Of a DNA stretch of 64,000 nucleotides, positions 16,632 to 63,697 are shown piece after piece; position 1 is the first letter of the stretch; every line of letters begins with the position of its first letter. Location: IMG/VR virus record IMGVR_UViG_3300029922_000001, positions 186,001 through 250,000 of that record, one strand, 5' to 3'. The notes beneath the pieces are model-generated. The model ran no database searches. It worked only from the letters and a program-made list of their open reading frames with translations, and was not told the origin of the DNA. A program made the translations under genes and the position numbers.

Positions 16632-18387
16632 TTTTATTTACTTTGGTTTCTGCCCAAACATAAACATCATCTGAAGCATTCTTAATTATAGCTTCAACTT
16701 CCTTTGATAGTTCACTAAGGATCTCTATATTCGTAGAATCTTTTGCATCATTTAATGAAGCAAGCATATCTTCTAATTCATCAATAAATTCTTGTGTAAA
16801 TGCAGCCTTGTTATTGCGTAAGAATGATTCAATTTGAATGAGTTGTGAGAATAGAACAGCCTGACCATTTTTAATGGTCAGTTCTAATTGATCTTGTTCT
16901 TTGTGTAATTCTGCATTTTTTAGAATATCTTGAATTTCTTCAGGAGTTAATGAAGAACCACCAGTAATAAGCATTTCTACTTCAGTACCAGTGATAGCAT
17001 CTAATGCTTTAACACTTAAAATTCCATTAACGTCAATCTTAAAGGTAACATCAATCTTGGCTACGCCTCTTGGTGCTGGAGCTATTGTAAGTTTAAATTC
17101 GTCAAGTTTACGGTTATCTTTAACATTAGGACGTTCACCTTGGAAAACTTTAACATCAACAGATTCTTGACCATCTTCATAAGTGGTAAATCTTTCAGTG
17201 AATTCATGAGGGATGGTAGTGTTTCTACGAATCATAACACTCATTAACTCTCCATAAACCTCAACACCTAAACTGAGTGGTGTTACGTCAAGTAGTAAAA
17301 TATCTCTCTTTCGATTACCAGTGATCGTTGCAGCTTGAATAGCGGCACCAATTGCAACTGCTTCATCTGGATTAACACCCTTATGTGGTTCTAATCCAGT
17401 TAACTTTTTGAGTTCATCTGATACATATGGAATTCTTGTAGATCCACCAACTAAAACGATTTGATTAAGGTCTTTATAGTCTATGTGAGCATCGTTTAAA
17501 GCTTGCTTAACGGACATTAATGTTTCAGTGATCAACGGTTTAATCATTTCGTTGAATTTAGCTCTAAACATTTTATATCTAAAGGGTTTAGCACCGAAAA
17601 AGTAAGGAATTTTAACTTCGTATGATTGGTTAAATGATAATTGCTTTTTCATTTTTTCCGCAGCTTCTCTAAGGCGAGAAAGAACTGCAACATCACTACA
17701 GTCTAAATCAGGCATTTCTTTGTTTACTTCTTTGATGAAGACATTCATAATTAACTTATCAATATCGTCACCACCTAAAGCTGTGTTACCAGCAGTGGAT
17801 TTGACTTCAAAAACACCATCATCACTAAGTTTCAAAACAGTAACATCAAATGTTCCACCACCTAAATCATAGACCAAAATAGTTTCGTTTTTGTTTTTAC
17901 CTAATCCATAAGCTAATGAAGCGGCTGTAGGTTCATTGATAACTCTTAATACGTTCAAACCAGCAAGTTCACCCGCAACCATTGTGGCTTTTCTTTGATT
18001 ATTATCAAAGTAAGCTGGAACGGTAATAATAACATCTGTGATTTCTTCTTCTAAGAAACTTTCTGCATCATTTTTTAGCTTTCTAAGAATTTCTGAACTA
18101 ATTTCTTCTGGACTTAAAACTCTATCCTTAATCCTAAATCGTTTGTTAGTTCCCATATATCGCTTAATAGATCGAATAACATTTTCGGGAGTAAATGCCT
18201 CTTGTTCAATAGCAGAATTTCCAATAAGAACTTCTCCATCTACAATTGTGAAAACCGAAGGGGTGGTTCTGTCGCCTTCTGAATTTGTTAAAACTTCAAT
18301 AGTACCATCATCTTTAACGTGAGCTACGCAAGAAAATGTAGTTCCAAGGTCTATGCCGAGTACGGAAATATATTCTTTATTTTTCAT
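16603..18387 (-). CDS. dnaK: Hsp70/DnaK chaperone
   Basis: GIDLGTT, TVPAYF, INEPTAA, YDLGGGTFDV, LVGGSTRIP, LLDVTPLSLG; short subdomain IB and no acidic tail. Confidence 0.96.
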   Translation of the reverse strand: MKNKEYISVLGIDLGTTFSCVAHVKDDGTIEVLTNSEGDRTTPSVFTIVDGEVLIGNSAIEQEAFTPENVIRSIKRYMGTNKRFRIKDRVLSPEEISSEILRKLKNDAESFLEEEITDVIITVPAYFDNNQRKATMVAGELAGLNVLRVINEPTAASLAYGLGKNKNETILVYDLGGGTFDVTVLKLSDDGVFEVKSTAGNTALGGDDIDKLIMNVFIKEVNKEMPDLDCSDVAVLSRLREAAEKMKKQLSFNQSYEVKIPYFFGAKPFRYKMFRAKFNEMIKPLITETLMSVKQALNDAHIDYKDLNQIVLVGGSTRIPYVSDELKKLTGLEPHKGVNPDEAVAIGAAIQAATITGNRKRDILLLDVTPLSLGVEVYGELMSVMIRRNTTIPHEFTERFTTYEDGQESVDVKVFQGERPNVKDNRKLDEFKLTIAPAPRGVAKIDVTFKIDVNGILSVKALDAITGTEVEMLITGGSSLTPEEIQDILKNAELHKEQDQLELTIKNGQAVLFSQLIQIESFLRNNKAAFTQEFIDELEDMLASLNDAKDSTNIEILSELSKEVEAIIKNASDDVYVWAETKVNKIGATIGETK

Positions 18388-53252: not shown

Positions 53253-53270
53253 AATAATTCTCCTGTCTCG

Positions 53271-53344
53271 TGGTCCCTCTGCTGAGAATCGAACTCAGAC
53301 CGAACCGTTATAAGCGGTTCCGCTCTACCTTGAGCTACAAAGGG
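53271..53344 (-). tRNA. tRNA-Ile (anticodon UAU)
   Basis: CCCTTTG/CAGAGGG acceptor, GCTC/GAGC D-stem, AACCG-CTTATAA-CGGTT, CTGAG-TTCGATT-CTCAG, encoded CCA. Confidence 0.92.
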
Positions 53345-53368
53345 GTGTTTGTAATGGGTGTGGGGTTG

Positions 53369-53390
53369 GTATACGCTAATTAGCGTATAC
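53369..53390. repeat. perfect 22-bp palindrome upstream of tRNA-Ile
   Basis: gtatacgctaa-ttagcgtatac. Confidence 0.9.
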
Positions 53391-53507
53391 TTATGAAGCC
53401 AAACGCAGGAGAGTTCTGGGAAATATCATTATAGATTTGATAGTTTGACTTCATTACGTATCTATTATACCAGCATTTAGAGGAAAATTGTCTGAATTTC
53501 TATGTGT

Positions 53508-53744
53508 TTATTGATATTCTACTGTTACTGTTCCGCTAACATCAACTTCTTTATGGTTATCTTTAGTGCAAAAATAATAAATACCACTTGAGAGATGAAC
53601 TTCTCCATCAGAAGTATATTGATTGAGAATCTTGCCATCACTTGAATAAACCGTAACTTTGGAGTCAGTGTAATCTGCTCCACAACCGCACATGATTAAC
53701 GAAAATAAGGATAAGGTAAGAATAGAGATTGTAATTCTTTTCAT
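53508..53744 (-). CDS. putative lipoprotein
   Basis: signal peptide ending IMCGC. Confidence 0.65.
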   Translation of the reverse strand: MKRITISILTLSLFSLIMCGCGADYTDSKVTVYSSDGKILNQYTSDGEVHLSSGIYYFCTKDNHKEVDVSGTVTVEYQ

Positions 53745-54163
53745 GGTTTTATTATACCATATTTTGGCATACGAATCATATCTATGTAACCGCCCATTTC
53801 TGCACGAGTTTTGCCGGTTTGGTTTATGAAATTTTCAACTACAAATCCATGACGATTATACCATTCGATAAGTTGTTGTTCATTTAATTTAGGTATTCCA
53901 TGATCATATAAAGGAAGTGGTTTAACTTCTAACCATAAGGTTACACCATGACGATCTGCGTAATAGGAAATTTCATCTAGAGTTCTAGAAGCAAAGCCTT
54001 TAAATTCATGATCTGATTTGATGTAATCAATATAAAGTATTTTATTATTTCTGCCTATCAATAGTTCAACTTCAATAAGACCAAAATAAATAAAATGCTG
54101 TGATGTTTTTGGTGTAACATTATATGAACATTTCATATCAAGAAGCATTTCAGAGACGCCCAT
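53741..54163 (-). CDS. GNAT-family acetyltransferase
   Basis: IDYIKS..EFKGFASRTL, LWLEV, LIEWYNRHGF. Confidence 0.7.
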   Translation of the reverse strand: MGVSEMLLDMKCSYNVTPKTSQHFIYFGLIEVELLIGRNNKILYIDYIKSDHEFKGFASRTLDEISYYADRHGVTLWLEVKPLPLYDHGIPKLNEQQLIEWYNRHGFVVENFINQTGKTRAEMGGYIDMIRMPKYGIIKP

Positions 54164-54202
54164 ATTGAATCATTCAAAAAATAAAGCTTTTATCCTATGT
54201 AA

Positions 54203-54538
54203 TTACTTACTTATGATAAAAGCTTTATCGCTGATTCGCATGACAAAAACAGCTTCTTGTGCATAATGTTTCAAAGTGAATTCCACAATCGTTTTAATTT
54301 GTTCTTCGTTACAGGCAATCCTTACTGGAATCATTAATTCTTTATGGATTTTACCTGTGGGACTAACCCATTGCCCTTTAGAAACTTTTTGAATAGTTAA
54401 TCCTCCAGCAATATCTCTCACATAATCATCCCAGATATTGTGATAGGGAACTAATACATTTTTCCTTCCCATTTTATAGGGAACCAATATTTCCCAAACT
54501 TCAGTTTCTAAATTCATGATGAAATTATTATGACACAA
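54203..54538 (-). CDS. hypothetical phage protein
   Basis: WEILVP, GGLTI, GQW, MIPVRIAC. Confidence 0.65.
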   Translation of the reverse strand: MCHNNFIMNLETEVWEILVPYKMGRKNVLVPYHNIWDDYVRDIAGGLTIQKVSKGQWVSPTGKIHKELMIPVRIACNEEQIKTIVEFTLKHYAQEAVFVMRISDKAFIISK

Positions 54539-54548
54539 TCTATGCTAT

Positions 54549-54833
54549 TTATGCAAGGGCAGGAGATTTTGTTTTAATAACGTTCAAACAGTCGATGTAA
54601 CCCATTGCTCTTTCTTTAATTTCTTTATTATCAAAGATTAGAACTGTAGGTACGGTAGTGATAAAAAATGATTCTGCGGCTTCCATGTTTTCTTCGATAT
54701 CACAAATAGCAACATTCATATCGTCTGTAATTTGCTTTTTAAGATTTTGGCATGGCGCACACCAAGGGGCAGAAAATAAGACTATGCTTTGCGAAGCTGT
54801 GTCTTTAATTTGTTCGTATGTAATTGATTTCAT
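54549..54833 (-). CDS. thioredoxin-like protein
   Basis: FSAPWCAPC, TTVPT cis-Pro loop. Confidence 0.85.
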   Translation of the reverse strand: MKSITYEQIKDTASQSIVLFSAPWCAPCQNLKKQITDDMNVAICDIEENMEAAESFFITTVPTVLIFDNKEIKERAMGYIDCLNVIKTKSPALA

Positions 54834-54905
54834 AGGTATATATTATGATAATTCAAATGAACCCAAATATAACCAAAAAGGTTAGAACTCGTCGGAGTGA
54901 ATCAG

Positions 54906-54994
54906 TAGAAGGCTAGGAAATCGAGTCCTTAACGGCTATTTACCGTCACACCTATTTTCGAAATAGGGCTAATAACCATATTAGAAAACCTTCT
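54906..54994 (-). tRNA. non-canonical tRNA-like RNA, anticodon CGA (Ser), 8/4 fold with 6-bp D-stem and long variable arm
   Basis: AGAAGGTT/AGCCTTCT; CTAATA-TGGT-TATTAG; CCTAT-TTCGAAA-ATAGG; TGACGG/CCGTTA; AGGA-CTCGATT-TCCT; no encoded CCA. Confidence 0.75.
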
Positions 54995-55002
54995 TATAAT
55001 TC

Positions 55003-55257
55003 TTACTGTAGTGTAGCCAAGAATTCATCAATAGCTTCGCTAAATGATGCAAACTCAACTCTGGAACGATCAGGGTACAAAACAGACCAAGTTTCACCAT
55101 CCATCTTTTCAATTAAAGATTTTTTACCTGAAACCTTCAATCCATATTGCAAAACTTGAGCAATAGGCATCTTTAACAGTGAGTTGTGATAATAAGGTTC
55201 TGGGGCAGGAATTGGTGGAACGACGTTAGATTCTTTTACTGGTTTTTCTTTTTTCAT
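55003..55257 (-). CDS. hypothetical protein
   Basis: 84 aa; GGAG RBS. Confidence 0.65.
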   Translation of the reverse strand: MKKEKPVKESNVVPPIPAPEPYYHNSLLKMPIAQVLQYGLKVSGKKSLIEKMDGETWSVLYPDRSRVEFASFSEAIDEFLATLQ

Positions 55258-55277
55258 ATTAATCTCCTAATAATGAA

Positions 55278-55625
55278 TTATACAGTTAATTCAGTATTAG
55301 GAGATTTGATTTTGGATTTTTGATATAAATCTTCGTAGTGTTTATCAATTTCTTGTTTAAAAGTCTTGAAATTCAAACCATGTTCAGGTGCCCATGATCT
55401 ACTACCACAAGAAGTAACGACATCTAAATCAATAAGCATTTTGCCCACTGTGCTATCAGAAATATAAGCATCATGATTTTCTAACTCTTCTAAAAGTTCG
55501 AATAAATCTTGAAGATCATATTCAACATCGTTAATAGTAATCCAATAACGATAAGCTATATATGGTTCAAGTCTTGGTTTACTAATAGGCAAATCGTTAG
55601 TCAAATCTAAGGTTAATTGTGGCAT
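55278..55625 (-). CDS. hypothetical protein (paralogue of the next gene)
   Basis: YWITINDVEYDLQDLFELL; ATG 6 nt after TATACT. Confidence 0.7.
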   Translation of the reverse strand: MPQLTLDLTNDLPISKPRLEPYIAYRYWITINDVEYDLQDLFELLEELENHDAYISDSTVGKMLIDLDVVTSCGSRSWAPEHGLNFKTFKQEIDKHYEDLYQKSKIKSPNTELTV

Positions 55626-55643
55626 AATCTGAGTATACCTTAA

Positions 55644-56003
55644 TTAGTCATTTATGTGTGCTAAACGACTTTTATAGATTAAAGTCGTTAATTCTTCATT
55701 GAGAAAAGATATAAATTTATCATAATTAACATCGGCATTTTGAATGGAATGATTTACCTCTGGATATTTACCTTTATTCGAATGCACAATAACTTTTAAG
55801 TCTTGTAACATAGCTCTTGTGGCTGGATTCCAAACATGTCCCCATCTACGATGTTCAAAACTTTTAAATATATCCAGTAATTCCTGAATGTTATATTTGA
55901 CTCCCTTAACCACAATGAAATAATGATGAACCCAAACTTGCTCAGACTCATATTTAACAGTATCAATGCCTAAATCATTCATAATATCAGAAGTATACCT
56001 CAA
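55644..56003 (-). CDS. hypothetical protein (paralogue of the previous gene)
   Basis: YFIVVKGVKYNIQELLDIF. Confidence 0.7.
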   Translation of the reverse strand: MRYTSDIMNDLGIDTVKYESEQVWVHHYFIVVKGVKYNIQELLDIFKSFEHRRWGHVWNPATRAMLQDLKVIVHSNKGKYPEVNHSIQNADVNYDKFISFLNEELTTLIYKSRLAHIND

Positions 56004-56647
56004 ATCGTATATGATTTGAGGTTATAAAAATACGCCCTTGTTAATCTTTTGACCGTAGAGCTAGGTCCAATCCAAGACATGACGTGCCAACCACTAACAC
56101 CCATTGACGAGCCTGTAACAGCCATTTGGAGCCTAATGGATATGTTCTTGACTTTCATGCCCAACTCTACACATAATGCTTTAATTGTGGTTTGAACCCA
56201 CTCTAAGGAAATGTCATTCTCACCTTCAAGAAGAGGTATATAATGATCTAAAAACAATCTAAAATCATCATCAAAAAGAGTTGGATTCTCAAAGGGAATT
56301 TCATAGTCAGAAATGGCAATACAACTCAAATGTTTAGCAAAATCAGATAGAATAAATGCTTTATCCTTAATATGCACAAGCATTTCATCAATGCGAGGAT
56401 GATTCAAAGTGTCTTTGAAATGATGTAGTTGCGCTCCCATCAATCGTTTATTGAAATCCTTAATTTGCTTATTGTAGTCAACCTCATTGTCCTCATTGAC
56501 TTCTATGGGGTTGTTTTTAATGATCGTATCTAAGATCATGAGATTTGGTAACTTTGAGTTATCAATATCGAACAAATTTGGTTTGTATAGAAAATCGCGC
56601 ATAATGCGTTTATTATACTTTATATTAACCCCTTTCAGCTTCTTCAA
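56000..56647 (-). CDS. stand-alone class I aaRS (GluRS-type) anticodon-binding domain protein
   Basis: IKALCVELGMKVKNISIRLQMAVTGSSMGVSGWHVMSWIGPSSTVKRL resembles the GluRS C-terminal helical domain; no HIGH/KMSKS; true start may be ATG 56602. Confidence 0.6.
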   Translation of the reverse strand: MKKLKGVNIKYNKRIMRDFLYKPNLFDIDNSKLPNLMILDTIIKNNPIEVNEDNEVDYNKQIKDFNKRLMGAQLHHFKDTLNHPRIDEMLVHIKDKAFILSDFAKHLSCIAISDYEIPFENPTLFDDDFRLFLDHYIPLLEGENDISLEWVQTTIKALCVELGMKVKNISIRLQMAVTGSSMGVSGWHVMSWIGPSSTVKRLTRAYFYNLKSYTI

Positions 56648-57044
56648 GAGCTAATTTAAGCATACCAACTTGACATTCTTTCCAATTAGCCACTCTTGGA
56701 TTTTTGGAGTTTTGTTCGTATTTGCGAATATTATCTTTTAGATATTCGCATTGTTGAGCTAATTCTTTTTTCTTTTTATCTAAAATGATAACCAGTTGTT
56801 CTTTAAGTGTTTTAACATTATTATCAATCAAAATATGTTTTACGTCCCAAGGATTATAATGTCTATAATTGTACTTACCAAGTCTAACAACAAATAAATC
56901 AACTTTACCATTTGGCAAAATTACATCTTCTGTAGCGTTTGTCCAGTCGGATTCGTAAACATAACATTCCGTTATAACGAATTCATTATTGGCTTGACTA
57001 TACAATAAACCGAATGTATTTGGTTTTTCTTTGGGCAATAACAT
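56625..57044 (-). CDS. hypothetical protein
   Basis: 139-aa ORF. Confidence 0.65.
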   Translation of the reverse strand: MLLPKEKPNTFGLLYSQANNEFVITECYVYESDWTNATEDVILPNGKVDLFVVRLGKYNYRHYNPWDVKHILIDNNVKTLKEQLVIILDKKKKELAQQCEYLKDNIRKYEQNSKNPRVANWKECQVGMLKLALEEAERG

Positions 57045-57328
57045 TATAATGGTATTATACCTTTTTTGCCGTATGTCTTGTTAGGTAATGGTTTTGTCCA
57101 TGAAATCAAATCATCGCCAGCTTTTTGCAGTTCTTTTCTAGTTGGTGTTCCATGAAGCATATACATTCCTATTGCTTTAACATCTTTTGATACATCTTCC
57201 AGTACATAATCTAATCCAGTGTAATCATGTAATTTCAACTGTGCGGCATTAGATTGTGCAATTACAGTTAAAATTGAAGCTTCTTCTGCGGGAACATTAA
57301 TCATATTATTCCTCAATATAGAAGTCAC
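57044..57328 (-). CDS. hypothetical protein
   Basis: 94-aa ORF. Confidence 0.6.
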   Translation of the reverse strand: MTSILRNNMINVPAEEASILTVIAQSNAAQLKLHDYTGLDYVLEDVSKDVKAIGMYMLHGTPTRKELQKAGDDLISWTKPLPNKTYGKKGIIPL

Positions 57329-57692
57329 TTAATTTGCCAAGGAAAAAATCGTGAATTATTTCAGTGTCACTTTCTGCGTCTTCGTCAGTTGTTTTAGTGT
57401 CACCCTCTTCATCTTCGTCACCTACTTCAATTGTTGCAACTATAACATTATTACTATCACTAACTATTGCAACCAAACCGTTAATTAAACCTAGTGCTGA
57501 AATGTAAAACTTGTCATCAATACAAGTAAGACCACAAGTTAAACCATCTAATTTTTCTACTGTTTCGGTATCTATTGGATGTTTAGTTAACAAAACCTTT
57601 GATACTATTTCTGGGGCAACTTCAACATATTTATTTAATAATGAAATGATAGATTCTAAATTGTCACTTCCAAGTCCACTGTACATACTCAT
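57306..57692 (-). CDS. hypothetical protein
   Basis: 128 aa; ATG 5 nt after TACAAT. Confidence 0.7.
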   Translation of the reverse strand: MSMYSGLGSDNLESIISLLNKYVEVAPEIVSKVLLTKHPIDTETVEKLDGLTCGLTCIDDKFYISALGLINGLVAIVSDSNNVIVATIEVGDEDEEGDTKTTDEDAESDTEIIHDFFLGKLSDFYIEE

Positions 57693-57708
57693 GCTTTATT
57701 GTAAAGCA

Positions 57709-58053
57709 TTAAAATGTGTCATGTGGTTCTTGACCAATAGCTTGTTTTAAATCTGTGTGAAATTGGGCAACAGGATTTGGTTGTTGTTGCAATAATGGTT
57801 GTTGAGTAGCGTCAGGCTTATAAATTAAATGCCACAACCCTTCAATGGTCTTTAAGATTTGTGGTAGTTTAGAATCGGTATCATCAACTTCATGTTCTAT
57901 AACAGAAGCAAGATCACGTAACTCTCCAGCGGCATGAGTACAAGTACTTGCAGTTGTTAATCTAATAGCAACTCTAGTAACAGAGTCCGCTTTTTTAAAT
58001 TCACCCTTTTTGTCATATGCCGTTGCGTATTCAATAAGTTTATCTGCGTTCAT
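57709..58053 (-). CDS. hypothetical protein with recurrent motif
   Basis: KLIEYATAYDKKGEFKKADSV. Confidence 0.7.
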   Translation of the reverse strand: MNADKLIEYATAYDKKGEFKKADSVTRVAIRLTTASTCTHAAGELRDLASVIEHEVDDTDSKLPQILKTIEGLWHLIYKPDATQQPLLQQQPNPVAQFHTDLKQAIGQEPHDTF

Positions 58054-58089
58054 GATTACCAAATTCTACAAACCTGGTAATCATTCCTT

Positions 58090-58446
58090 TTAATCAGTAT
58101 TAACTTTTAGAATTAATCTTGTTAAATCTGCGGTGTCTGCTTTAATGCCATAAAATTCTTGTAAGTCTAATGCCCTATTCCATGCGGAATTGTATGGATT
58201 TTCAGGTTTACTAACTTCAAATTCCTTTTGAATTGCCACAATTTCTTCATCTAGTCTAAATTGTGCGTTAGTTAAATATTTATAAATCCACTTTACCGTT
58301 CCATATTCTTTTTGACGTTCAACATGCACTGTTGCGTGTGCTAAAATAGCATCAGTAAAATTGTGATTTTTTCTAACAACGATCACTGGATTGAAAGCAA
58401 AAGCTTGACATGCTCCAGGTAGCCAAGACACACGGATAATTTTCAT
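58090..58446 (-). CDS. zincin-like small protein with degenerate HExxH
   Basis: AILAHATVHVERQKEYG..WIYKYL. Confidence 0.5.
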   Translation of the reverse strand: MKIIRVSWLPGACQAFAFNPVIVVRKNHNFTDAILAHATVHVERQKEYGTVKWIYKYLTNAQFRLDEEIVAIQKEFEVSKPENPYNSAWNRALDLQEFYGIKADTADLTRLILKVNTD

Positions 58447-58655
58447 ATGATTATTATAGCTTGTTTTGTTGAGCTAAATCAAGTAGTATTTTTTGACGTT
58501 CTAATGGTGCAGAGACATAATCTGTTTTGATTAATTTACTGGTTTGCGTACTAGATAGACGATCTAATATACCAATCATGCTATTTAATAATATAATTTT
58601 TCTATTTTTTCTTTATCGCAATTTACAATAATTTTATCCAGTCTATCCAATCTAT

Positions 58656-58982
58656 TCATTTTATTCGCTCCATTAATATTTTGCTTCTTTTAGATGGTGA
58701 TTTGGTTAGGAAGCCACAACCTTTAGCTTTATTGTAATCTAAATCAAAATCAAATTGATCTTTAGTGATATCAACTATGTCTTGTGTTTGTGGATTTTTT
58801 AAAAACCAATGAGTAATACCATCGACATTTAAAATGAATGGTTTGAAACCCAATTCTTTATATTTAAGATGATAAGCTACCTCGGAAGCCACATAACAAT
58901 GACCCCAATAAGGATTAGAATGACCCCTGAATTGGGGTTTTAATAAATCTTGTGTTAAATGGCTTTGGATTTGTGTAATCAT
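58656..58982 (-). CDS. hypothetical phage protein
   Basis: WGHCYVASE, THWFL, VDITKDQF (possible Cys-His-Asp triad). Confidence 0.7.
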   Translation of the reverse strand: MITQIQSHLTQDLLKPQFRGHSNPYWGHCYVASEVAYHLKYKELGFKPFILNVDGITHWFLKNPQTQDIVDITKDQFDFDLDYNKAKGCGFLTKSPSKRSKILMERIK

Positions 58983-59527
58983 TTCTTGACGATTCTTTTC
59001 CTGATATCAGCTTCAATTAAGGCATAGTCAGCACGTACTCTATCTGTGACTTGATAACCATCCTCAACATCAATACCAAAACGTTTTCGTGCATTGACGG
59101 TATCAGCATCTGGACCTGTCATGGGTAGATATTTAAGACTACCATTAACTTTAACCATTTCTCTATCGTTATTGCCGTAAGCACATTTAGCTACTGAATT
59201 GTAAGGATTACCATCTTCTGGAATATAACCACGCAGTTTACTTCCGTCCCAATAAATAATAAAGAACACCGGATATTCCCAGTCTCCACCAGCACTAACT
59301 CCTAAAAAGGTTAAACCATTATCAAGGGTGTGAATACCCGTTAATGGTGTGAATTTATCTTCAGCATCTTCTACGTTCTCACAATCAAAGCTAACTTTTG
59401 CTAAATCCTTTGTGATAGTTGTGGTAAGTGTTGGGTATTGATAATAACCGAATTCATCAGAATCTCTAGCTTTTTGAAGTTTAATTCTAAAATCTTTTTC
59501 AGGTATTTCCACAAAGAATCTACTCAT
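58979..59527 (-). CDS. hypothetical protein
   Basis: 182 aa; AGGDWEYPVFFIIYWDG. Confidence 0.7.
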   Translation of the reverse strand: MSRFFVEIPEKDFRIKLQKARDSDEFGYYQYPTLTTTITKDLAKVSFDCENVEDAEDKFTPLTGIHTLDNGLTFLGVSAGGDWEYPVFFIIYWDGSKLRGYIPEDGNPYNSVAKCAYGNNDREMVKVNGSLKYLPMTGPDADTVNARKRFGIDVEDGYQVTDRVRADYALIEADIRKRIVKK

Positions 59528-59720
59528 TGTCTAGATCCACTACTTTAGTTAAATTAGGTAATAACTCTACTAGCTTACGATAAGCTTTAGTGTTAATATG
59601 AAATTTTTCAGTATCTGTGTATATTCTAAACTGACTATCATTGAACGAAGTTACAATACCTACAATTTTATCTGTATTAACATGGTAAATATATGGTCCA
59701 TTTTTATATGTGATATACAT
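59520..59720 (-). CDS. hypothetical protein
   Basis: 66 aa; ATG 6 nt after TATAAT. Confidence 0.65.
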   Translation of the reverse strand: MYITYKNGPYIYHVNTDKIVGIVTSFNDSQFRIYTDTEKFHINTKAYRKLVELLPNLTKVVDLDNE

Positions 59721-59887
59721 GCTTACATTATAACACTATTTGACTATAAAATACAACACTTTAGGTGGATTACGGTAATATTTAGCTAAAGTTGCTTGAC
59801 CCTCCAGTGTTGCTAATGCACGATCAATAATAGCTTCTCTATCTTTCATATCTTGAATAATTGCATTAATATTTTTCGTGTTACTCG

Positions 59888-59993
59888 TGGAGCGGGTAGC
59901 GGAATTCGAATCCGCATTTTAGCGTTCCTCTAAGTAAATATTTTAATATTTCTCACAGGCAACGCCATGTTCTAACCATTGAACTATATCCGC
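59888..59993 (-). tRNA. tRNA-Gly (GCC) with a 31-nt insert/intron (59927-59957) between positions 36 and 37
   Basis: GCGGATA acceptor, GTTC/GAAC D-stem, TGGCG-TTGCC|insert|AA-CGCTA, GCGGA-TTCGAAT-TCCGC, CCA; removing the insert gives a canonical 75-nt tRNA. Confidence 0.88.
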
Positions 59994-60014
59994 GTGAATA
60001 TATTATACCACTTA

Positions 60015-60281
60015 TTAAGACGCTTTGACCTTTTTGTGAGTGTATTGTTCGGCGTTAATTAATTGTGAAATATTAGGATCTGAGCTAAATTCAATATCAT
60101 TCTTAATGATATTGAGGACTTCTTCACCATTTGGCATAGAAATTAATTTCTCTATTAAAGAAAATAATTTTCTATTTTGTTCCATTTGTGCGTCAAGTAC
60201 ATCTTTATTAACCATAATTTTGGGTGTAAAATTTGGTATATATTTATAACTGCATGGCATTCTTTCTGATCGTATTGGCAT
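60015..60281 (-). CDS. hypothetical protein
   Basis: 88-aa ORF. Confidence 0.55.
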   Translation of the reverse strand: MPIRSERMPCSYKYIPNFTPKIMVNKDVLDAQMEQNRKLFSLIEKLISMPNGEEVLNIIKNDIEFSSDPNISQLINAEQYTHKKVKAS

Positions 60282-60287
60282 AGATTA

Positions 60288-60656
60288 TTATAGTCTAATT
60301 CTAAAAGAAACTGATGGATCAACAATAATTACAGGTTCTGGATCATAATAACCAACAATAGGACCGTTTTCATAATAAGCTACCCCACCACCTTCATACC
60401 AAAACATGGTGACATCACCAATAACGTAGGTTGTAACCCAATGGCATCTAGGTCTTTCACCAATGCGCCAAACACGAGTAGGAGTGAATCTATAATGTTC
60501 AAATCTACGAATTCTAGAGTGTTCTGGTCTGCGATTTTGTTCTTGTCTAATTGCGGGTCTGCGTGATTCTTGATGACCACCACGACGCTGAGCTAAACCA
60601 CTAACAGAAAGAGCTAGAATAGAGCAAAGAGCAATAAGTTTTAGATTTTGTTTCAT
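60288..60656 (-). CDS. putative secreted protein
   Basis: N-terminal signal peptide (LIALCSILALSVSGLA), Arg-rich segment. Confidence 0.65.
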   Translation of the reverse strand: MKQNLKLIALCSILALSVSGLAQRRGGHQESRRPAIRQEQNRRPEHSRIRRFEHYRFTPTRVWRIGERPRCHWVTTYVIGDVTMFWYEGGGVAYYENGPIVGYYDPEPVIIVDPSVSFRIRL

Positions 60657-60686
60657 ACCTTATTATTATCCCTTTGCACTTTAAAT

Positions 60687-61037
60687 TTACTGAGAATTAT
60701 TTAAGATATCACTTCTTAAATGATCATATTTGCTTCGTTCATCTGCATACAAAGTGATAAGGGATTGTAGTCTTTCATCAGTAATGTCAGTAAGAATTTC
60801 CATTTCTGGAATTTCACCCCATACGTTGTATATCTTATGTTTAATACAAAACTGCGTATGTCTTCGTTTACAATAAGGCTGGAAAATTAGCACATAAAAC
60901 ATAAATATTGTGAAAATACAGCCCATTACAAGTACCCAATGGAAAATAGCACTTGCAATTAAAAGAAAGTATCCACCAAAAACAATCCACATTGGCAGAA
61001 CACGAGTGGTGAAATGTGTGTTATAAAAATTACTCAT
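60687..61037 (-). CDS. putative membrane protein
   Basis: two N-terminal hydrophobic helices. Confidence 0.65.
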   Translation of the reverse strand: MSNFYNTHFTTRVLPMWIVFGGYFLLIASAIFHWVLVMGCIFTIFMFYVLIFQPYCKRRHTQFCIKHKIYNVWGEIPEMEILTDITDERLQSLITLYADERSKYDHLRSDILNNSQ

Positions 61038-61264
61038 GATGAAAGTGTACCTTATTTCTTGATATGTTTATGGGTGTACTCATGAAATTCGGCAAGATGA
61101 AGATGCGGATGGGCGTTATTTTGAGCCATTTGCTGTATTGATTTCTTTGCCTTTAAGCATTTAGTATGGAAATATCCTTCCGGGGGGTTGACACAAGCTT
61201 AAAACATTTTAAATGCCAATTCCAGTGTTTGTTACAAAACTTACAAGTTTTCATATATAACTCG

Positions 61265-61292
61265 TGGAGCGAATAGCGGGATTCGAACCCGC
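61265..61292 (-). pseudogene. orphan tRNA 3' half (T-arm, acceptor 3' strand, CCA), Gly-like
   Basis: GCGGG-TTCGAAT-CCCGC-TATTCGC-T-CCA with no matching 5' half upstream. Confidence 0.75.
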
Positions 61293-61521
61293 CGATTTAT
61301 AATTTAATGTGGTTTACCATATTGATCGCCAAAATATATCAAAGCAATTAATTCTAGAAAAACAGAACTAAAATGATGAAATTCCAATGAACCTAATAAG
61401 GCTATGAAGAAAAATATCATGGAAACTTACACTTTTACATTTTGGACAATGTAGTTTTTCTGTAGCTTTCAAGTCTTTGAAATTGACAATAAATTGTCTT
61501 GTTGCTATCATAGTTTTACTC

Positions 61522-61620
61522 GGAGCGGGTGTGGGTAGTCGAAACCCAATCTACTACTTCCTTTAGGTATATTCCTATCCCAAAGGAAGGAAGTTATAAT
61601 AGCCGTTATAAGACACCCGC
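61522..61620 (-). tRNA. tRNA-Gly (UCC) with a 25-nt insert/intron (61560-61584) between positions 36 and 37
   Basis: GCGGGTG/CACCCGC acceptor, glyT-like D-arm, ACTTC-CTTCC|insert|AA-GTAGT (one T-T mismatch), TGGGT-TTCGACT-ACCCA; ends TCC without the final A. Confidence 0.82.
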
Positions 61621-61647
61621 TTACACATATATTATGCCCAATAATGA

Positions 61648-61869
61648 TTAGGTTTTTAGTGCAAATTCCTCATTTGTAGATACTAATTTTCTGATATATT
61701 CGGAAAGAACGTCTTCTACACCATTTGAACCATAGTCGGCAGTAAAAGCATAATCACCACCATCAATTCCTGAATTTTCGTATTTAACCAGTAGGCGCTT
61801 ATGTGGTCTTTCATAAATACCAACAGCACGTCCACATACCATAGTTACATATAATCTTTGATTTTCCAT
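61648..61869 (-). CDS. hypothetical protein
   Basis: ATG 61869 lies 6 nt after TATAAT. Confidence 0.65.
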   Translation of the reverse strand: MENQRLYVTMVCGRAVGIYERPHKRLLVKYENSGIDGGDYAFTADYGSNGVEDVLSEYIRKLVSTNEEFALKT

Positions 61870-61876
61870 GTGATTA

Positions 61877-62224
61877 TTATAGCACAAAATCCGCCGCAAC
61901 TTCTATGTGTTTTACAGTACTCACCTCACTTGCTTCTTTATTGTATTGATCAATTTTATTAGCCATACCAACAAGGCATTCTGCTATTTCTCTTAAATCT
62001 TCTGTTTCTATAAACGGCATATGTATTTCTGATCTACAATCCCCTTCTTCGCCACAAAACACAAACGTCGTGAATAAATTAGGACCTCCTGGGAATTGAC
62101 GATTTGGATTGATATCTATTGTGTCAATATAAAAACATTGTTTAGCGCCTTCTCTATCCGTATTTTCCGCACCAACTACTCTATATGTTTTTGTTTTAAC
62201 TTCACGATCAATCATTTTATTCAT
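61877..62224 (-). CDS. hypothetical protein
   Basis: 115-aa ORF. Confidence 0.65.
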   Translation of the reverse strand: MNKMIDREVKTKTYRVVGAENTDREGAKQCFYIDTIDINPNRQFPGGPNLFTTFVFCGEEGDCRSEIHMPFIETEDLREIAECLVGMANKIDQYNKEASEVSTVKHIEVAADFVL

Positions 62225-62496
62225 CCTTCAACCTCAATAACTTTATTATATTGAATTTGTTCAGATAGCGTGTACTCTACAATTTCTACGGAATTTAAAT
62301 ATTCTTTATTAGAAACATTTCTTTGAGGATCATAATAAGAAATGTTTCTAAACTGAGTTAAATGCGCTTTAATATGATTTAACTGTTTCCATATTTTACC
62401 TTTTTTGTTAAATAACGGATCTAATCCACCTGTAGAAAATAATCCAGTTTCTTTATTTCTTAATTTATATACTTTCATTGTAAAACTCGAATACAT
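62221..62496 (-). CDS. hypothetical phage protein
   Basis: VYKLRNKETGLFSTGG..P.F.KKGKIW. Confidence 0.7.
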   Translation of the reverse strand: MYSSFTMKVYKLRNKETGLFSTGGLDPLFNKKGKIWKQLNHIKAHLTQFRNISYYDPQRNVSNKEYLNSVEIVEYTLSEQIQYNKVIEVEG

Positions 62497-62513
62497 TATT
62501 AGTATATAATGTA

Positions 62514-62801
62514 TTATTTAATTAATGATTTAGCAGAAACTTCAACTAATTCCACTAAAGATTTTTCACTCAAATATCCACTATTAAATAATTTAACAGA
62601 TTGAGCAAGAAATTCAGATTCTTCCAATACCATTTTTTCTGTTAATGGCACAGAATTTCGTAATTTTTCAGCAAGTAAAATTATGGTTTTTCGCAATTCT
62701 ACATCTAAATGTTTTCCGTTTTCTAATTTAAATTTAAGTAAATTTAAAGTTTCATTCAATTCGTAATTAATTTCTTCTAGGGTTTCAACAGTGTGTTTCA
62801 T
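62514..62801 (-). CDS. hypothetical protein
   Basis: 95-aa helical ORF. Confidence 0.65.
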   Translation of the reverse strand: MKHTVETLEEINYELNETLNLLKFKLENGKHLDVELRKTIILLAEKLRNSVPLTEKMVLEESEFLAQSVKLFNSGYLSEKSLVELVEVSAKSLIK

Positions 62802-62940
62802 ATCAAATAATAATTTAATAATTTATATATTCTATACCTTCGGTTTGTTAATGAGTTTTGTCTGCAAATCATATTATATTTAAAATACTAGTAATTTTAC
62901 TTGTTTATGGTATATAAATAAAATTATTCTTATCACAATC

Positions 62941-63429
62941 CTAAGTACTATCTTTAGTTGGATTAACACTAAATAATTCTTTTCTTATTTCCATCCACAA
63001 TTTTCCTAATTGATTTTGTCCATCTTTATTAGGTCCCCATCCCCAAAAATTATCACGCCAACTACACTCTACGATTGCATTATCACCACTAGCTTTAAGT
63101 TTTTTCATAACATACGGATGTTGATTTGCTTTTTCTTTTAAAATTTCTTTCATAATATCAAGTTTAACTTCATCCCAATCAACACGTCTTATATTTTTAT
63201 TTTCCTCAGCCCATTTGAAACAAGCATGTGCTGAAGGCATTTTTCTAATCATATTTTTGATTTTTGGATCGTCAAATTTCTCAGAATGATAAGCGTGTTC
63301 TGATGTTGGATAAATCTTACCCTTCCAATATAGTTGAAATGCAGAAAAATTAGAGAAAATATAATAATCACGTTCATAACAATCAAGGATTGGTAAGTCG
63401 TAATTCGCTAAATCGTGATATTCAATCAT
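62941..63429 (-). CDS. NADAR (YbiA/DUF1768) family hydrolase
   Basis: FSNF, YPTSEHAYHSEKF, DNFWGWG, GQNQLGKLWMEIR; start at ATG 63429. Confidence 0.9.
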   Translation of the reverse strand: MIEYHDLANYDLPILDCYERDYYIFSNFSAFQLYWKGKIYPTSEHAYHSEKFDDPKIKNMIRKMPSAHACFKWAEENKNIRRVDWDEVKLDIMKEILKEKANQHPYVMKKLKASGDNAIVECSWRDNFWGWGPNKDGQNQLGKLWMEIRKELFSVNPTKDST

Positions 63430-63436
63430 GCTATTA

Positions 63437-63697
63437 TTATAAGTAATCTTCATGATATTCTACTACTGGAGTGTTTGATTTAGCTTTAGACTCTTCTTCA
63501 GCTAACATGCCCTTTTGATAAGCCTCATTAAGCAATCTTAAATGTCTAGCTTCATGATCAGTAATCTCTCCATCCATTTGTGAAATTGAATTTATATCTT
63601 GTTCAACATACATCATCTTAGGAGATTCGTTAACGTCCTGAAATAATTTAAGATCGTGTGTTTTGGTTGTATTTTCGTTTATGATATTTGGTTTCAT
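63437..63697 (-). CDS. hypothetical protein
   Basis: 86 aa; ATG 5 nt after CATAAT. Confidence 0.6.
   Translation of the reverse strand: MKPNIINENTTKTHDLKLFQDVNESPKMMYVEQDINSISQMDGEITDHEARHLRLLNEAYQKGMLAEEESKAKSNTPVVEYHEDYL

What the first reader, a model, noticed from the sequence alone, without database searches (positions are those of the whole stretch)
53271..63429. Possible integrated 'tRNA armour' system in the accessory region
Synthesis of separate observations: anticodon-masked intron tRNAs, an 8/4 allo-type tRNA, a TilS-independent tRNA-Ile, a half-tRNA, a common trailer and a free anticodon-binding domain all fall within 10 kb on one strand, interspersed with GNAT, thioredoxin and NADAR genes. 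Established: many anti-phage systems cut or modify host tRNA anticodon loops. Inference: a coordinated strategy of supplying structurally atypical or conditionally matured tRNAs. The required splicing enzymes are not identifiable in this window and may be among the small hypothetical ORFs.
Basis: inference. Interest (0 to 1): 0.75.

Follow-up and report, generated by a model that had tools for sequence, protein, structure and literature searches.

The report
Phage tRNA genes with hairpin inserts
This 10-kb stretch of a roughly 440-kb peat megaphage holds real but unusual tRNA genes, two of which carry a short hairpin insert that buries the anticodon; they belong to a genome-wide tRNA supply-and-repair strategy in a fast-changing accessory region, not to one integrated 'armour' module.

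Summary
On the minus strand there are:
- a tRNA-Ile(UAU);
- an 8/4 tRNA-Ser(CGA);
- two Gly tRNAs with 25-31-nt inserts in the anticodon loop;
- a decayed tRNA-Gly(UCC);
- a stand-alone GluRS-type anticodon-binding domain;
- thioredoxin and NADAR genes.

No GNAT was found. The 'common trailer' (CGAG) follows 28 of 29 predicted tRNAs across the whole genome, so it is not specific to this region.

The striking part is the inserts. At least six tRNAs in this 441-kb genome carry one (a seventh, at genome 389592-389681, has a long anticodon arm but does not fit the rule), and one more in a ~95%-identical relative. In each, a 17-31-nt hairpin sits just after the anticodon and pairs with it. Insert-free orthologues in the relative show these are discrete insertions in tRNAs that otherwise keep their structure through compensatory changes. 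There is no bulge-helix-bulge motif and no EndA. The inferred cut sites are staggered by 2 bp.

The genome encodes PNK, an Rnl1-like ligase, four Rnl2-family ligases and Tpt1, all outside the window.

The 'integrated system' reading is weak. Elements vary independently between relatives, and the anticodon-binding-domain gene occurs elsewhere without tRNAs. My best reading is intron-like pre-tRNAs, but splicing is unproven because no RNA data exist.

The parts
53271..53344 (-). tRNA-Ile(UAU), canonical cloverleaf with a 6-bp anticodon stem and encoded CCA, followed by a CGAG trailer (53267-53270)
   Evidence: ARAGORN. Rfam 58.7 bits. Fold. Conserved in the relative at L024 13325-13398. AUA makes up 20% of Ile codons in long ORFs.
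54549..54833 (-). Thioredoxin-family ORF (94 aa)
   Evidence: Pfam PF00085, E = 8.3e-11. Conserved in the relative.
54905..54994 (-). 8/4-type tRNA-Ser(CGA): 8-bp acceptor, 6-bp D stem with a 4-nt loop, loop UUCGAAA, 7-bp variable arm, 4-bp T stem. The CGAG motif lies about 14 nt downstream rather than adjacent.
   Evidence: RNAfold (z = -3.2). ARAGORN calls the orthologue at L024 11674-11762 as tRNA-Ser(cga). Differences from the relative fall only in loops and the trailer. Not detected by Rfam.
56000..56647 (-). Stand-alone GluRS-type anticodon-binding domain protein. The ORF is 215 aa; the likely true start is the internal Met used by the relative, giving 200 aa.
   Evidence: Pfam PF19269, E = 4.6e-14, positions 6-140 of the 141-position profile. 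PDB GluRS 8jpv, E = 0.004. It is the only PF19269 hit in the genome, and there is no PF00749 hit. Only 4 homologues among 5.8 billion proteins.
59888..59993 (-). tRNA-Gly(GCC) with a 31-nt insert. Anticodon GCC is at 59960-59958, the insert at 59957-59927, and A37 A38 at 59926-59925. It encodes CCA followed by a CGAG trailer, and has an extended -10 promoter (TGGTATAAT, from about 60010).
   Evidence: Rfam 52.8 bits. Fold z = -6.1. The relative has an insert-free tRNA-Gly(GCC) with loop TTGCCAA at the same locus. Identity supported by G1-C72, C2-G71, G3-C70, U73 and body similarity of 0.79. The X2 contig covering 58744-60657 is identical.
61268..61330 (-). The T arm, 3' acceptor strand, CCA and CGAG are intact. 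The 5' acceptor and D arm are diverged, and the anticodon arm is replaced by A/T-rich sequence.
   Evidence: The 3' 45 nt are identical to the intact tRNA-Gly(UCC) at L024 5300-5374. There are only partial T-arm hits in Rfam. Fold z = -1.45.
61522..61620 (-). Gly(UCC)-like tRNA with a hairpin insert. U33 is at 61588 and the anticodon UCC at 61587-61585. By homology the insert is 61584-61560. The trailer is CCGAG. The acceptor/T branch can be read as 8/4 or 7/5.
   Evidence: ARAGORN -i -ps. Fold z = -4.7. A homologous insert-bearing tRNA lies at L024 3806-3897 (Rfam 38.8 bits), differing by 12 compensatory pair changes. Contigs from X2 and X5 span it.
62941..63453 (-). NADAR-domain ORF (170 aa)
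   Evidence: Pfam PF08719, E = 4.2e-27. Conserved in the relative.

Best explanation
SETTING
The region is part of a one-strand accessory block of small genes in a peat megaphage. The JGI contig is 441 kb, and a 521-kb contig carries identical proteins. tRNA genes are scattered through the block, at least two of them (the Gly(GCC) gene and tRNA-Ile) behind a GGTATAAT-type extended -10 promoter, and it continues past the window end to about genome 254 kb.

THE INSERT-BEARING tRNAs
Two of the tRNA genes (Gly-GCC and Gly-UCC-like) belong to a class that occurs genome-wide. In this class the gene is interrupted by a 17-31-nt insert directly 3' of the anticodon (between nt 36 and 37; between 35 and 36 in Cys). 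The last two insert nucleotides pair with anticodon nt 35-36, and A37/A38 pair with U33/N34. The anticodon stem therefore runs on as one uninterrupted hairpin, and the anticodon is buried.

These are most likely intron-like pre-tRNAs. To decode, they would have to lose the hairpin through two cuts staggered by 2 bp (leaving a 3' overhang) and then be resealed. The sealing and healing enzymes are phage-encoded elsewhere in the genome: a T4-type PNK, an Rnl1-like ligase, four Rnl2-family ligases, and Tpt1 next to the adjoining tRNA cluster. The endonuclease is unidentified. It could be a host dsRNA-type enzyme such as RNase III, or an unrecognised phage protein.

THE OTHER ELEMENTS ARE ORDINARY OR INDEPENDENT
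- tRNA-Ile(UAU) supplies the frequent AUA codon.
- The 8/4 tRNA-Ser is a type already known in phages.
- The 'half-tRNA' is a relic.
- The anticodon-binding domain is a rare orphan of unknown role.
- Thioredoxin and NADAR are common jumbo-phage accessory genes.

SHOWN VERSUS INFERRED
- Shown: the structures, the insert positions, the presence/absence polymorphism, the compensatory evolution and the enzyme inventory.
- Inferred: that the inserts are excised, by what, and that this serves counter-defence.
For: 1. Discrete insertion. Own tRNA-Thr(UGU) (genome c253296-253394) and its orthologue in the ~95% relative differ by a single indel, 18 nt exactly between U36 and A37. They also differ by 5 compensatory pair changes, none of them disruptive. 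The relative's loops CTGCAAA and TTGCCAA confirm the mature loops of the Cys and Gly(GCC) genes.
2. Structure is under selection. There are 8-12 compensatory double changes per pair across three positional orthologue pairs, with the helices kept. This includes the insert-bearing pair, window 61522-61620 versus L024 3806-3897.
3. The anticodon read 5' of the insert agrees with independent identity marks in every case: Gly (G1-C72, C2-G71, G3-C70, U73), Cys (U73), Leu (A73 plus long variable arm), Lys (A73), and Thr (U73 plus the orthologue). It also agrees with cluster membership and body similarity.
4. The geometry is uniform in all seven insert-bearing tRNAs analysed: six in this genome (for the window's Gly(UCC)-like gene only by homology, not in its minimum-energy fold; the Cys cut site was chosen among three possible) and one in the relative. 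Exactly two exon nucleotides pair with the last two insert nucleotides. G·U pairs in the hairpins point to RNA-level rather than DNA-level selection.
5. Enzymes present: PNK with kinase and HAD phosphatase (genome 287883-288761); Rnl1-like ligase (402770-403822); four PF09414 ligases; Tpt1 (253903-254463, E = 1.6e-44), directly upstream and co-directional with the Thr/Ser tRNA cluster.
6. Real DNA. Sequence is identical across the inserts in independent runs.
7. Jumbo phages are known to carry KptA, RNA ligase and NADAR kits for tRNA restoration (PMC9503650; PMC7824862).
Against: - There is no RNA evidence at all, because no RNA run holds this phage.
- No endonuclease was identified. EndA, RtcB, RNase III, 2H phosphoesterase and CCA-adding enzyme are absent by Pfam.
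- The hairpins have no BHB bulges, so no known tRNA-splicing enzyme fits.
- The distal stems are only 5-6 bp in most cases, which is short for bacterial RNase III (my own knowledge).
- Tpt1 has no obvious substrate if PNK/Rnl1 chemistry is used.
- One long-arm tRNA-like gene (genome 389592-389681) does not obey the rule.
- Three of the six insert-bearing tRNAs have insert-free isoacceptors in the same genome, so translation may not depend on them.
- The comparison rests on a single close relative lineage.
- The helices used for the compensatory counts were defined by hand.
Confidence: 0.5

Rival explanations
1. The insert-bearing tRNAs are never spliced and act in the form in which they are made. 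One version: they are tRNA-shaped decoys or sponges, with a nuclease-proof double-stranded anticodon arm, that bind host anticodon nucleases, tRNA-modifying enzymes or synthetases. Another version: they serve only as processing punctuation in polycistronic transcripts.
For: - The anticodon is fully sequestered in a stable helix.
- No splicing endonuclease was found.
- Three of the six have insert-free isoacceptors next to them.
- tRNA genes are followed closely by small ORFs, so RNase P/Z processing would release mRNAs.
- Acidobacterial allo-tRNAs have been proposed to act as regulatory ncRNAs (PMC5389517).
Against: - The exact anticodon triplet and the U33/A37/A38 context are kept in every case and match the acceptor identity. 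A pure decoy would not obviously need that.
- In this genome the only Gly(GCC), Gly(UCC) and Leu(UAG) genes are insert-bearing, while the relative keeps insert-free versions.
- The genome carries five RNA ligases and a PNK.
Confidence: 0.2
2. The elements in 53-63 kb form one integrated 'tRNA armour' module: atypical tRNAs, an anticodon-binding protein, and hidden splicing enzymes among the small ORFs. The module would be selected and inherited together.
For: - All the elements lie on one strand within 10 kb.
- Synteny of Ile(UAU), 8/4-Ser, thioredoxin, the anticodon-binding domain and NADAR is kept in the ~95% relative.
- tRNA-targeting defences are widespread (PMC12445682, PMC11464382, PMC11555353).
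Against: - Insert state, tRNA bodies and even the presence of tRNA genes differ between the two close relatives at the same loci.
- The anticodon-binding-domain homologues occur without tRNAs and with unrelated neighbours.
- Insert-bearing tRNAs and the trailer are genome-wide.
- No ORF in the region matches a nuclease or ligase in Pfam, PHROGs or NCBIfam.
- The repair enzymes lie 4-160 kb away.
- The GNAT is absent and the half-tRNA is a relic.
Confidence: 0.1
3. The inserts are neutral or mildly harmful lesions in redundant tRNA genes that are on their way to becoming pseudogenes, like the neighbouring Gly(UCC) relic.
For: - The region does contain a decayed tRNA.
- The Gly(GCC) gene has an A5·C68 mismatch.
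- Presence/absence differs between near-identical phages.
- Rfam at its gathering threshold misses several of these genes.
Against: - Insert-bearing genes keep full cloverleaves through many compensatory changes, including between two diverged insert-bearing orthologues.
- The insertions share one precise position and one pairing rule across six amino-acid or anticodon classes.
- The hairpins are far more stable than shuffled sequence (z = -4.7 to -6.1).
Confidence: 0.1
4. The insert acts at the DNA level. It disrupts the recognition site of a homing or defence endonuclease that targets conserved tRNA-gene sequence, as introns do for their own homing enzymes. RNA-level removal would then be a secondary necessity.
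For: - tRNA bodies are swapped as cassettes between conserved promoters, acceptor ends and trailers.
- The relative has a PD-(D/E)XK endonuclease gene inserted inside its Thr/Ser tRNA cluster, and a TnpB gene sits beside the Leu cluster here.
- T4 SegB targets the T4 tRNA gene region (my own knowledge).
Against: - The insert sequences are individually complementary to each anticodon and contain G·U pairs, which indicates selection on RNA structure.
- No endonuclease with such a specificity has been identified.
Confidence: 0.05

Closest known systems
Protein-spliced tRNA introns of archaea and eukaryotes (BHB motif, EndA/Sen endonuclease, then RtcB or Trl1 plus Tpt1)
   Same: A short (14-30 nt) non-coding insert in the anticodon loop, next to the anticodon. 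The insert pairs with the anticodon. Healing/sealing enzymes of the Trl1/T4 type (PNK, Rnl1-like ligase) and Tpt1 are present in the genome.
   Different: - The position is 36/37, not 37/38.
- There are no 3-nt bulges, and the central helix is 2 bp rather than 4 bp.
- The genome has no EndA or RtcB.
- The setting is bacterial: extended -10 promoters and Shine-Dalgarno sites.
Group I self-splicing introns in bacterial, cyanobacterial and phage tRNA anticodon loops
   Same: An insertion within or next to the anticodon of a bacterial-type tRNA gene, with presence/absence polymorphism.
   Different: The inserts are 17-31 nt, far below ribozyme size, and there is no Rfam group I hit.
Phage T4 tRNA repair (PNK plus Rnl1 against the PrrC anticodon nuclease) and the jumbo-phage KptA/ligase/NADAR repair kits
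   Same: The genome has a T4-type bifunctional PNK, an Rnl1-like ligase, Rnl2-family ligases, Tpt1/KptA, DUF4326 and NADAR, as described for jumbo phages (PMC7824862, PMC9503650).
   Different: These enzymes lie outside the reported region. Nothing described in those systems involves tRNA genes with built-in hairpin inserts.
Nuclease-resistant phage tRNAs (T5 and other phage tRNAs that escape PARIS, retron effectors and P2-OLD through changes in the anticodon stem or loop)
   Same: Phage-encoded isoacceptors of the tRNAs that defence nucleases target, including Thr(UGU) and Lys(UUU), with altered anticodon arms (PMC12445682, PMC11464382, PMC11555353).
   Different: The known cases are point substitutions or shortened stems in tRNAs that are directly functional. 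Here the loop is replaced by a long helix that cannot decode without processing.
8/4 allo-type tRNA-Ser (Mukai et al., PMC5389517)
   Same: An 8-bp acceptor with a 4-bp T stem, a Sec-like long D stem, a long variable arm and a Ser anticodon. This type is already reported in phages and in forest/peat soil datasets.
   Different: It reads the cognate UCG codon, which is rare in this phage (3% of Ser codons). Its discriminator is A. The CGAG motif is displaced by about 14 nt.
tRNA-Ile(UAU) decoding AUA without lysidine (Mycoplasma mobile, T4-like phages; my own knowledge)
   Same: A UAU anticodon in an AT-rich genome that uses AUA frequently.
   Different: Nothing unusual was seen. The modification state is unknown.

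Membership tests
Archaeal/eukaryal BHB tRNA intron | Two 3-nt bulges separated by a 4-bp helix at the splice sites | tested here: not met
   The minimum-free-energy folds of all seven anticodon arms show a continuous helix with at most 1-nt bulges. Only 2 bp form between the exon and the 3' end of the insert.
Archaeal/eukaryal BHB tRNA intron | Splicing endonuclease (EndA/Sen, PF01974) available | tested here: not met
   There is no PF01974 hit in the phage genome. The host is unknown, but the expression signals are bacterial.
Archaeal/eukaryal BHB tRNA intron | Insert lies between nt 37 and 38 (the canonical position) | tested here: not met
   The orthologue alignment places the Thr(UGU) insert between 36 and 37. 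The same holds for Gly, Leu and Lys. In Cys it is 33/34 to 35/36.
Group I intron in tRNA | A ribozyme core of about 200 nt or more that Rfam recognises | tested here: not met
   The inserts are 17-31 nt, and no Intron_gpI hit appears in the whole genome.
8/4 allo-type tRNA | A 12-bp acceptor/T branch split 8+4, a long variable arm and a Sec-like D arm | tested here: met
   The fold of 54905-54994 has an 8-bp acceptor, a 6-bp D stem with a 4-nt loop, a 7-bp variable arm and a 4-bp T stem. The stems are invariant against the relative.
8/4 allo-type tRNA | Aminoacylated (with Ser) and active in translation | not testable with these tools
   No RNA or biochemical data are available.
T4-type tRNA healing-and-sealing system | Bifunctional PNK (kinase plus phosphatase) and an Rnl1-type ligase encoded by the phage | tested here: met
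   PF13671 plus PF25109 on one 292-aa ORF, and PF09511 on a 350-aa ORF. Both lie outside the window.
GluRS anticodon-binding domain (PF19269) | Full-length match above the Pfam gathering score | tested here: met
   53.5 bits against a cut-off of 23.6, covering profile positions 6-140 of 141. A GluRS C-terminal region in the PDB matches at E = 0.004.
GluRS anticodon-binding domain (PF19269) | Fold and tRNA-contacting surface conserved | tested here: inconclusive
   The AlphaFold2 model built on 5 sequences failed (pLDDT 36.7), so no fold comparison was possible.
Integrated defence/counter-defence gene system | Components co-occur and are syntenic across relatives | tested here: not met
   The insert state and the tRNA content differ in the ~95% relative. 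The anticodon-binding-domain homologues lack tRNAs and share no neighbours.

The most novel reading that the evidence does not exclude
These phages use a tRNA maturation route that has not been described before. In it, hairpin 'mini-introns' without a BHB motif are removed from bacterial-type pre-tRNAs by a double-strand cut staggered by 2 bp in an extended anticodon helix, and the loop is then resealed by phage RNA ligases.

In the boldest version the cutter is a host dsRNA or anticodon-arm nuclease, such as RNase III or an OLD/PARIS-like Toprim enzyme. Those Toprim enzymes leave 5'-phosphate and 3'-hydroxyl ends that T4 Rnl1 and Rnl2 can join (PMC12445682). The insert would then be a sacrificial extension, and the host's attack would turn the pro-tRNA into an active tRNA.
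Probability: 0.25. Interest if true: 0.85.

Novelty: new variant of a known kind. Interest (0 to 1): 0.62.

Why it matters
Protein-dependent splicing of short tRNA introns is treated as a trait of archaea and eukaryotes. Bacteria and their phages are known only for group I introns in tRNAs.

This phage lineage has six or more tRNA genes that carry precisely placed, anticodon-masking hairpins, together with an unusually rich set of RNA ligases, a PNK and Tpt1. If the inserts are excised, that would reveal a new processing pathway in the bacterial world. It could also give bacterial and phage Tpt1/KptA and the multiple phage RNA ligases a natural substrate.

It would also add a new tactic to the phage-host conflict over tRNA, namely tRNAs held in a nuclease-proof pro-form.

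Even if the RNAs turn out to be decoys, they would be a new kind of tRNA mimic. In practical terms, standard tRNA finders miss or misname these genes (ARAGORN called them Pro, Val, Arg, Gln and Trp), so tRNA inventories of huge phages may be systematically incomplete.

Tried and rejected
SEARCHES FOR RELATIVES
- INPHARED phages: megablast of the region, tblastn of the anticodon-binding domain, and blastn of a tRNA cluster. No relatives found.
- IMG/VR: peptide-pattern scans with two proteins, a 'tRNA between two CGAGA trailers' pattern, and the 3' half of the Gly tRNA. These gave only chance hits or nothing.
- JGI metagenomes: only the source contig was returned.
- GTDB genomes: two exact tRNA patterns, aimed at finding a host, gave nothing.

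RNA EVIDENCE
- No RNA run holds the phage.
- The DNA runs showed no variation and no insert-free form.

CANDIDATE SPLICING ENZYMES
- EndA, RtcB, RNase III, 2H phosphoesterase and CCA-adding enzyme are absent.
- A PD-(D/E)XK gene lies inside the relative's tRNA cluster, but the family is absent from this genome, so I rejected it as the cutter.
- The HNH-RNA-ligase fusion belongs to a widespread family of more than 720 members and is not specific to this lineage.

SMALL ORFs OF THE REGION
- Pfam, PHROGs and NCBIfam gave nothing beyond weak hits.
- An atlas search of the 182-aa ORF was uninformative.

OTHER
- The anticodon-binding-domain structure prediction failed.
- The neighbours of the anticodon-binding-domain gene are not conserved in its homologues' contigs.
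- The generic sigma-70 scan showed no enrichment over shuffles.
- I rejected ARAGORN's anticodon assignments for the insert-bearing genes (Pro, Val, Arg, Gln, Trp) in favour of Gly, Thr, Leu, Lys and Gly, based on orthologues, identity elements and cluster context.
- Literature searches found no description of such inserts in phage tRNAs.

Full report
WHAT THE WINDOW IS

The window is bases 186001-250000 of a single 441,498-bp contig with 33.9% G+C. IMG/VR classes the contig as a complete linear virus. It comes from peat metagenomes. It encodes phage hallmarks and jumbo-phage extras, including topoisomerase II, a PhoH/terminase-like ATPase and DnaK. A 521,591-bp contig in other assemblies carries identical proteins, so the 441-kb record may be incomplete.

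From about 52 kb to the window end, and on to about genome 254 kb, nearly all genes are small and lie on the minus strand. Several are preceded by GGTATAAT-type extended -10 elements.

CHECKING THE OBSERVATION

Default ARAGORN finds only tRNA-Ile(UAU) at 53271-53344. Rfam adds a 103-nt tRNA at 59891-59993 with a roughly 31-nt insertion in the anticodon loop (52.8 bits).

Reading the intergenic gaps and running ARAGORN with introns allowed gave three more elements:
- A second insert-bearing tRNA at 61522-61620.
- A T-arm plus acceptor remnant at 61268-61330.
- An element at 54905-54994 that folds as a cloverleaf with an 8-bp acceptor, a 6-bp D stem, a long variable arm and a 4-bp T stem. ARAGORN calls its orthologue in a relative tRNA-Ser(CGA).

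Fold energies are well below shuffled controls for the two insert-bearing genes (z = -6.1 and -4.7) and for the 8/4 gene (z = -3.2). The remnant is not (z = -1.45).

Pfam confirms thioredoxin (54549-54833), a full Anticodon_2 domain in a 215-aa ORF (56000-56647) and NADAR (62941-63453). No GNAT is present. The genome's GNATs lie at 372-386 kb and 434 kb.

CCACGAG follows three of the elements. However, CGAG follows 28 of 29 ARAGORN tRNA calls across the genome, against a background of 0.51 per kb per strand. The trailer is therefore a property of all this phage's tRNA genes, not of this region.

THE INSERTS ARE A GENOME-WIDE CLASS

Folding all candidates showed that at least seven tRNA-like genes, in five separate clusters, carry a 14-31-nt insertion. 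They lie at genome 172713, c245888, c247522, c251433, c253296, c275381 and 389592. In each, the insertion extends the anticodon stem into one long hairpin.

Rfam scores three of them above its gathering threshold despite the insert (52.8, 55.4 and 38.6 bits).

Independent peat runs carry identical sequence across the two window genes. One example is a 1914-nt contig covering 58744-60657 with no differences. The inserts are therefore not assembly artefacts.

A CLOSE RELATIVE SETTLES WHAT THE INSERTS ARE

The anticodon-binding-domain protein has only four homologues in 5.8 billion proteins. The 97%-identical one lies on a 41.8-kb ENA scaffold (loci L024 and L071). That scaffold is syntenic with the window and about 95% identical in coding blocks. 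At the tRNA loci the two phages differ as follows:
- Locus of the window's insert-bearing Gly(GCC): the relative has an insert-free tRNA-Gly(GCC) (65 bits) with loop TTGCCAA. It has the same promoter, the same acceptor ends and the same CCACGAG trailer, but different D, anticodon and T arms.
- Locus of the 'half-tRNA': the relative has an intact tRNA-Gly(UCC) whose last 45 nt are identical to the remnant. The remnant is a decayed gene.
- Second Cys gene: insert-free in the relative, with loop CTGCAAA.
- Thr(UGU), the cleanest case: this genome's gene and the relative's 82-nt tRNA-Thr(UGU) align end to end. The only indel is 18 nt exactly between U36 and A37. Five base pairs differ by compensatory double changes and none is broken.
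- The relative has its own insert-bearing Gly(UCC)-like gene (L024 3806-3897, Rfam 38.8 bits). It is homologous to window 61522-61620 and shares the core of the insert, but differs by 12 compensatory pair changes.

The inserts are thus discrete, polymorphic insertions in tRNA genes whose cloverleaves remain under purifying selection.

IDENTITY AND GEOMETRY

I read the anticodon immediately 5' of each insert. This gives Gly(GCC), Gly(UCC), Cys(GCA), Thr(UGU), Leu(UAG) and Lys(UUU).

Each assignment agrees with independent marks:
- acceptor and discriminator identity elements;
- a long variable arm for Leu;
- membership of the matching tRNA cluster;
- best body similarity.

ARAGORN's own assignments (Pro, Val, Arg, Gln, Trp) do not agree with these marks.

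All seven anticodon arms analysed obey one rule (for the window's Gly(UCC)-like gene the reading rests on homology with the relative's gene, not on its minimum-energy fold):
- N32 is bulged (G34 in the Gly(GCC) gene).
- U33 and N34 pair with A38 and A37.
- The two nucleotides before the insert pair with the last two insert nucleotides.
- The helix then continues inside the insert to a 3-5-nt loop.

Removing the insert therefore means cutting both strands of a helix with a 2-bp stagger and 3' overhangs. There are no 3-nt bulges, so this is not a bulge-helix-bulge motif, and the position is 36/37 rather than 37/38. For Cys three cut positions would give the same product, and one of them fits the rule. 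G·U pairs in the hairpins point to selection on the RNA rather than on a DNA palindrome.

One element, at genome 389592-389681, has a 15-bp arm that does not fit the rule.

ENZYMES

By Pfam the genome lacks EndA, RtcB, RNase III, 2H phosphoesterase and CCA-adding enzyme. It does encode:
- a T4-type bifunctional PNK;
- an Rnl1-like ligase;
- four PF09414 ligases, one fused to an HNH domain (this fusion family has more than 720 members, so it is not lineage-specific);
- a Tpt1/KptA 2'-phosphotransferase (E = 1.6e-44).

Tpt1, a DUF4326 protein and IF3 lie immediately upstream of, and co-directional with, the Thr/Ser tRNA cluster that holds the insert-bearing Thr gene. That is 3.9 kb beyond the window end.

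Such KptA/ligase/NADAR kits are known in jumbo phages and are interpreted as tRNA repair (PMC7824862; PMC9503650). All of them lie outside the reported region. None of the roughly 30 small ORFs in the region matched a nuclease or ligase.

THE OTHER ELEMENTS
- AUA makes up 20% of Ile codons, so a UAU isoacceptor is ordinary codon supply.
- 8/4 tRNA-Ser genes have been described in phages and soil or peat data (PMC5389517).
- The anticodon-binding domain is the genome's only PF19269 match. No GluRS catalytic domain is present, and the phage has no clear tRNA-Glu.
- The anticodon-binding-domain family is tiny. Its 52%-identical members sit on contigs without tRNAs and with non-homologous neighbours. 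Its role is unknown, and the structure model failed.

INTERPRETATION

The idea of one integrated module is not supported. The elements vary independently between close relatives, the distinctive features are genome-wide, and the enzymes are elsewhere.

The best-supported reading is that the insert-bearing genes are intron-like pre-tRNAs. The evidence is the discrete insertion, the preserved anticodon and its context, the compensatory evolution and a rich set of ligases and PNK. In this genome the only Gly(GCC), Gly(UCC) and Leu(UAG) genes carry inserts.

How the hairpin is removed is inference only. The 2-bp, 3'-overhang geometry is that of RNase III-type cleavage, whose 5'-phosphate and 3'-hydroxyl ends ATP-dependent ligases can join directly. 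Against that, the distance from the tRNA body is constant while the distance from the hairpin loop varies (5-11 bp). This suggests a ruler set on the mature domain, and the distal stems are short for RNase III.

A relevant precedent is P2-OLD. It makes a staggered double cut in the anticodon stem of tRNA-Thr(UGU), leaving ends that T4 Rnl1 and Rnl2 can join (PMC12445682). That makes a 'sacrificial extension' model conceivable, but it is untested.

The rivals are decoy RNAs that are never spliced, neutral decay, and DNA-level immunity to homing nucleases. They are weighed in the report sections.

No RNA data exist for this phage, so splicing is unproven.

NOVELTY

Searches of the held literature found no description of short hairpin inserts in phage tRNA genes. 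The repair kit, the 8/4 tRNA and the UAU tRNA are known kinds. The insert class is a new variant of tRNA interruption, and it may point to a new processing route.

Noticed in passing
whole genome; in the window at 53267-53270, 59884-59887, 61261-61264 and 61522-61526: CGAG(A) follows the discriminator (after 0-3 encoded nucleotides of CCA) of 28 of 29 predicted tRNAs, against a background of 0.51 per kb per strand. This is a universal 3' trailer of unknown role, possibly a processing signal. No CCA-adding enzyme gene was found in the genome.
   Followed up: partly
genome 253572-255016 (3.6-5 kb past the window end), minus strand: IF3, Tpt1/KptA (E = 1.6e-44) and DUF4326 genes lie directly upstream of, and co-directional with, the Thr/Ser tRNA cluster. 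The relative has the same arrangement, with a WGR-PARP gene nearby (L057).
   Followed up: partly
genome 12636-13289, 306286-307314, 366926-368086, 385970-386992, 402770-403822, 287883-288761: Five RNA-ligase genes (one Rnl1-like and four PF09414, one of them fused to HNH and one to a PHA02142 OB domain) plus a T4-type PNK. This is an unusually large RNA-joining repertoire.
   Followed up: partly
genome 172128-172200 and 353602-353673: Two tRNAs with a CUA (amber-reading) anticodon. TAG ends only 12 of 208 long ORFs. Stop-codon recoding of some genes is possible.
   Followed up: no
genome 293574-293927: ARAGORN predicts a tmRNA (tag GKSYAYVG*) behind a TGGTATAAT promoter, but Rfam at its gathering threshold does not report it.
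   Followed up: no
window 59740-60010 versus L024 6630-6850; genome 251433-251524 versus L024 1833-1908: tRNA bodies look swapped like cassettes. Promoter, acceptor ends and trailer are nearly identical between the two phages, while the D, anticodon and T arms differ at most pairs. The flanking genes are about 95% identical.
   Followed up: partly
L071 4229-4585 (relative scaffold): A 118-aa PD-(D/E)XK (PF11645) endonuclease gene lies inside the relative's Thr/Ser tRNA cluster. The family is absent from this genome. It is possibly a mobile homing-type nuclease.
   Followed up: partly
genome 275929-277275: A TnpB/IS605 OrfB (Cas12f-like) gene lies next to the Leu tRNA cluster that contains the insert-bearing Leu(UAG) gene.
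   Followed up: no
window 59891-59923 (loose ends in runs X2-X4): Community contigs share the 3' half of the window's Gly tRNA, then continue into an insert-free tRNA-Gly(CCC)-like 5' half. This is a further allele or relative. It was not found in GTDB genomes or IMG/VR.
   Followed up: partly
genome 389592-389681: A tRNA-like gene (Rfam 33.5 bits) whose anticodon arm is a 15-bp perfect hairpin with a 5-nt loop. It lacks U33 and does not follow the insert rule seen in the others.
   Followed up: partly
whole record: A 521,591-bp Logan/ENA contig carries proteins identical to this 441,498-bp record, so the window's genome may be about 80 kb longer than the record held.
   Followed up: no
window 16603-18387 (-): A phage-encoded DnaK/Hsp70 homologue, 40-45% identical to those of 630-735-kb uncultured huge phages and of Lak megaphages.
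   Followed up: no
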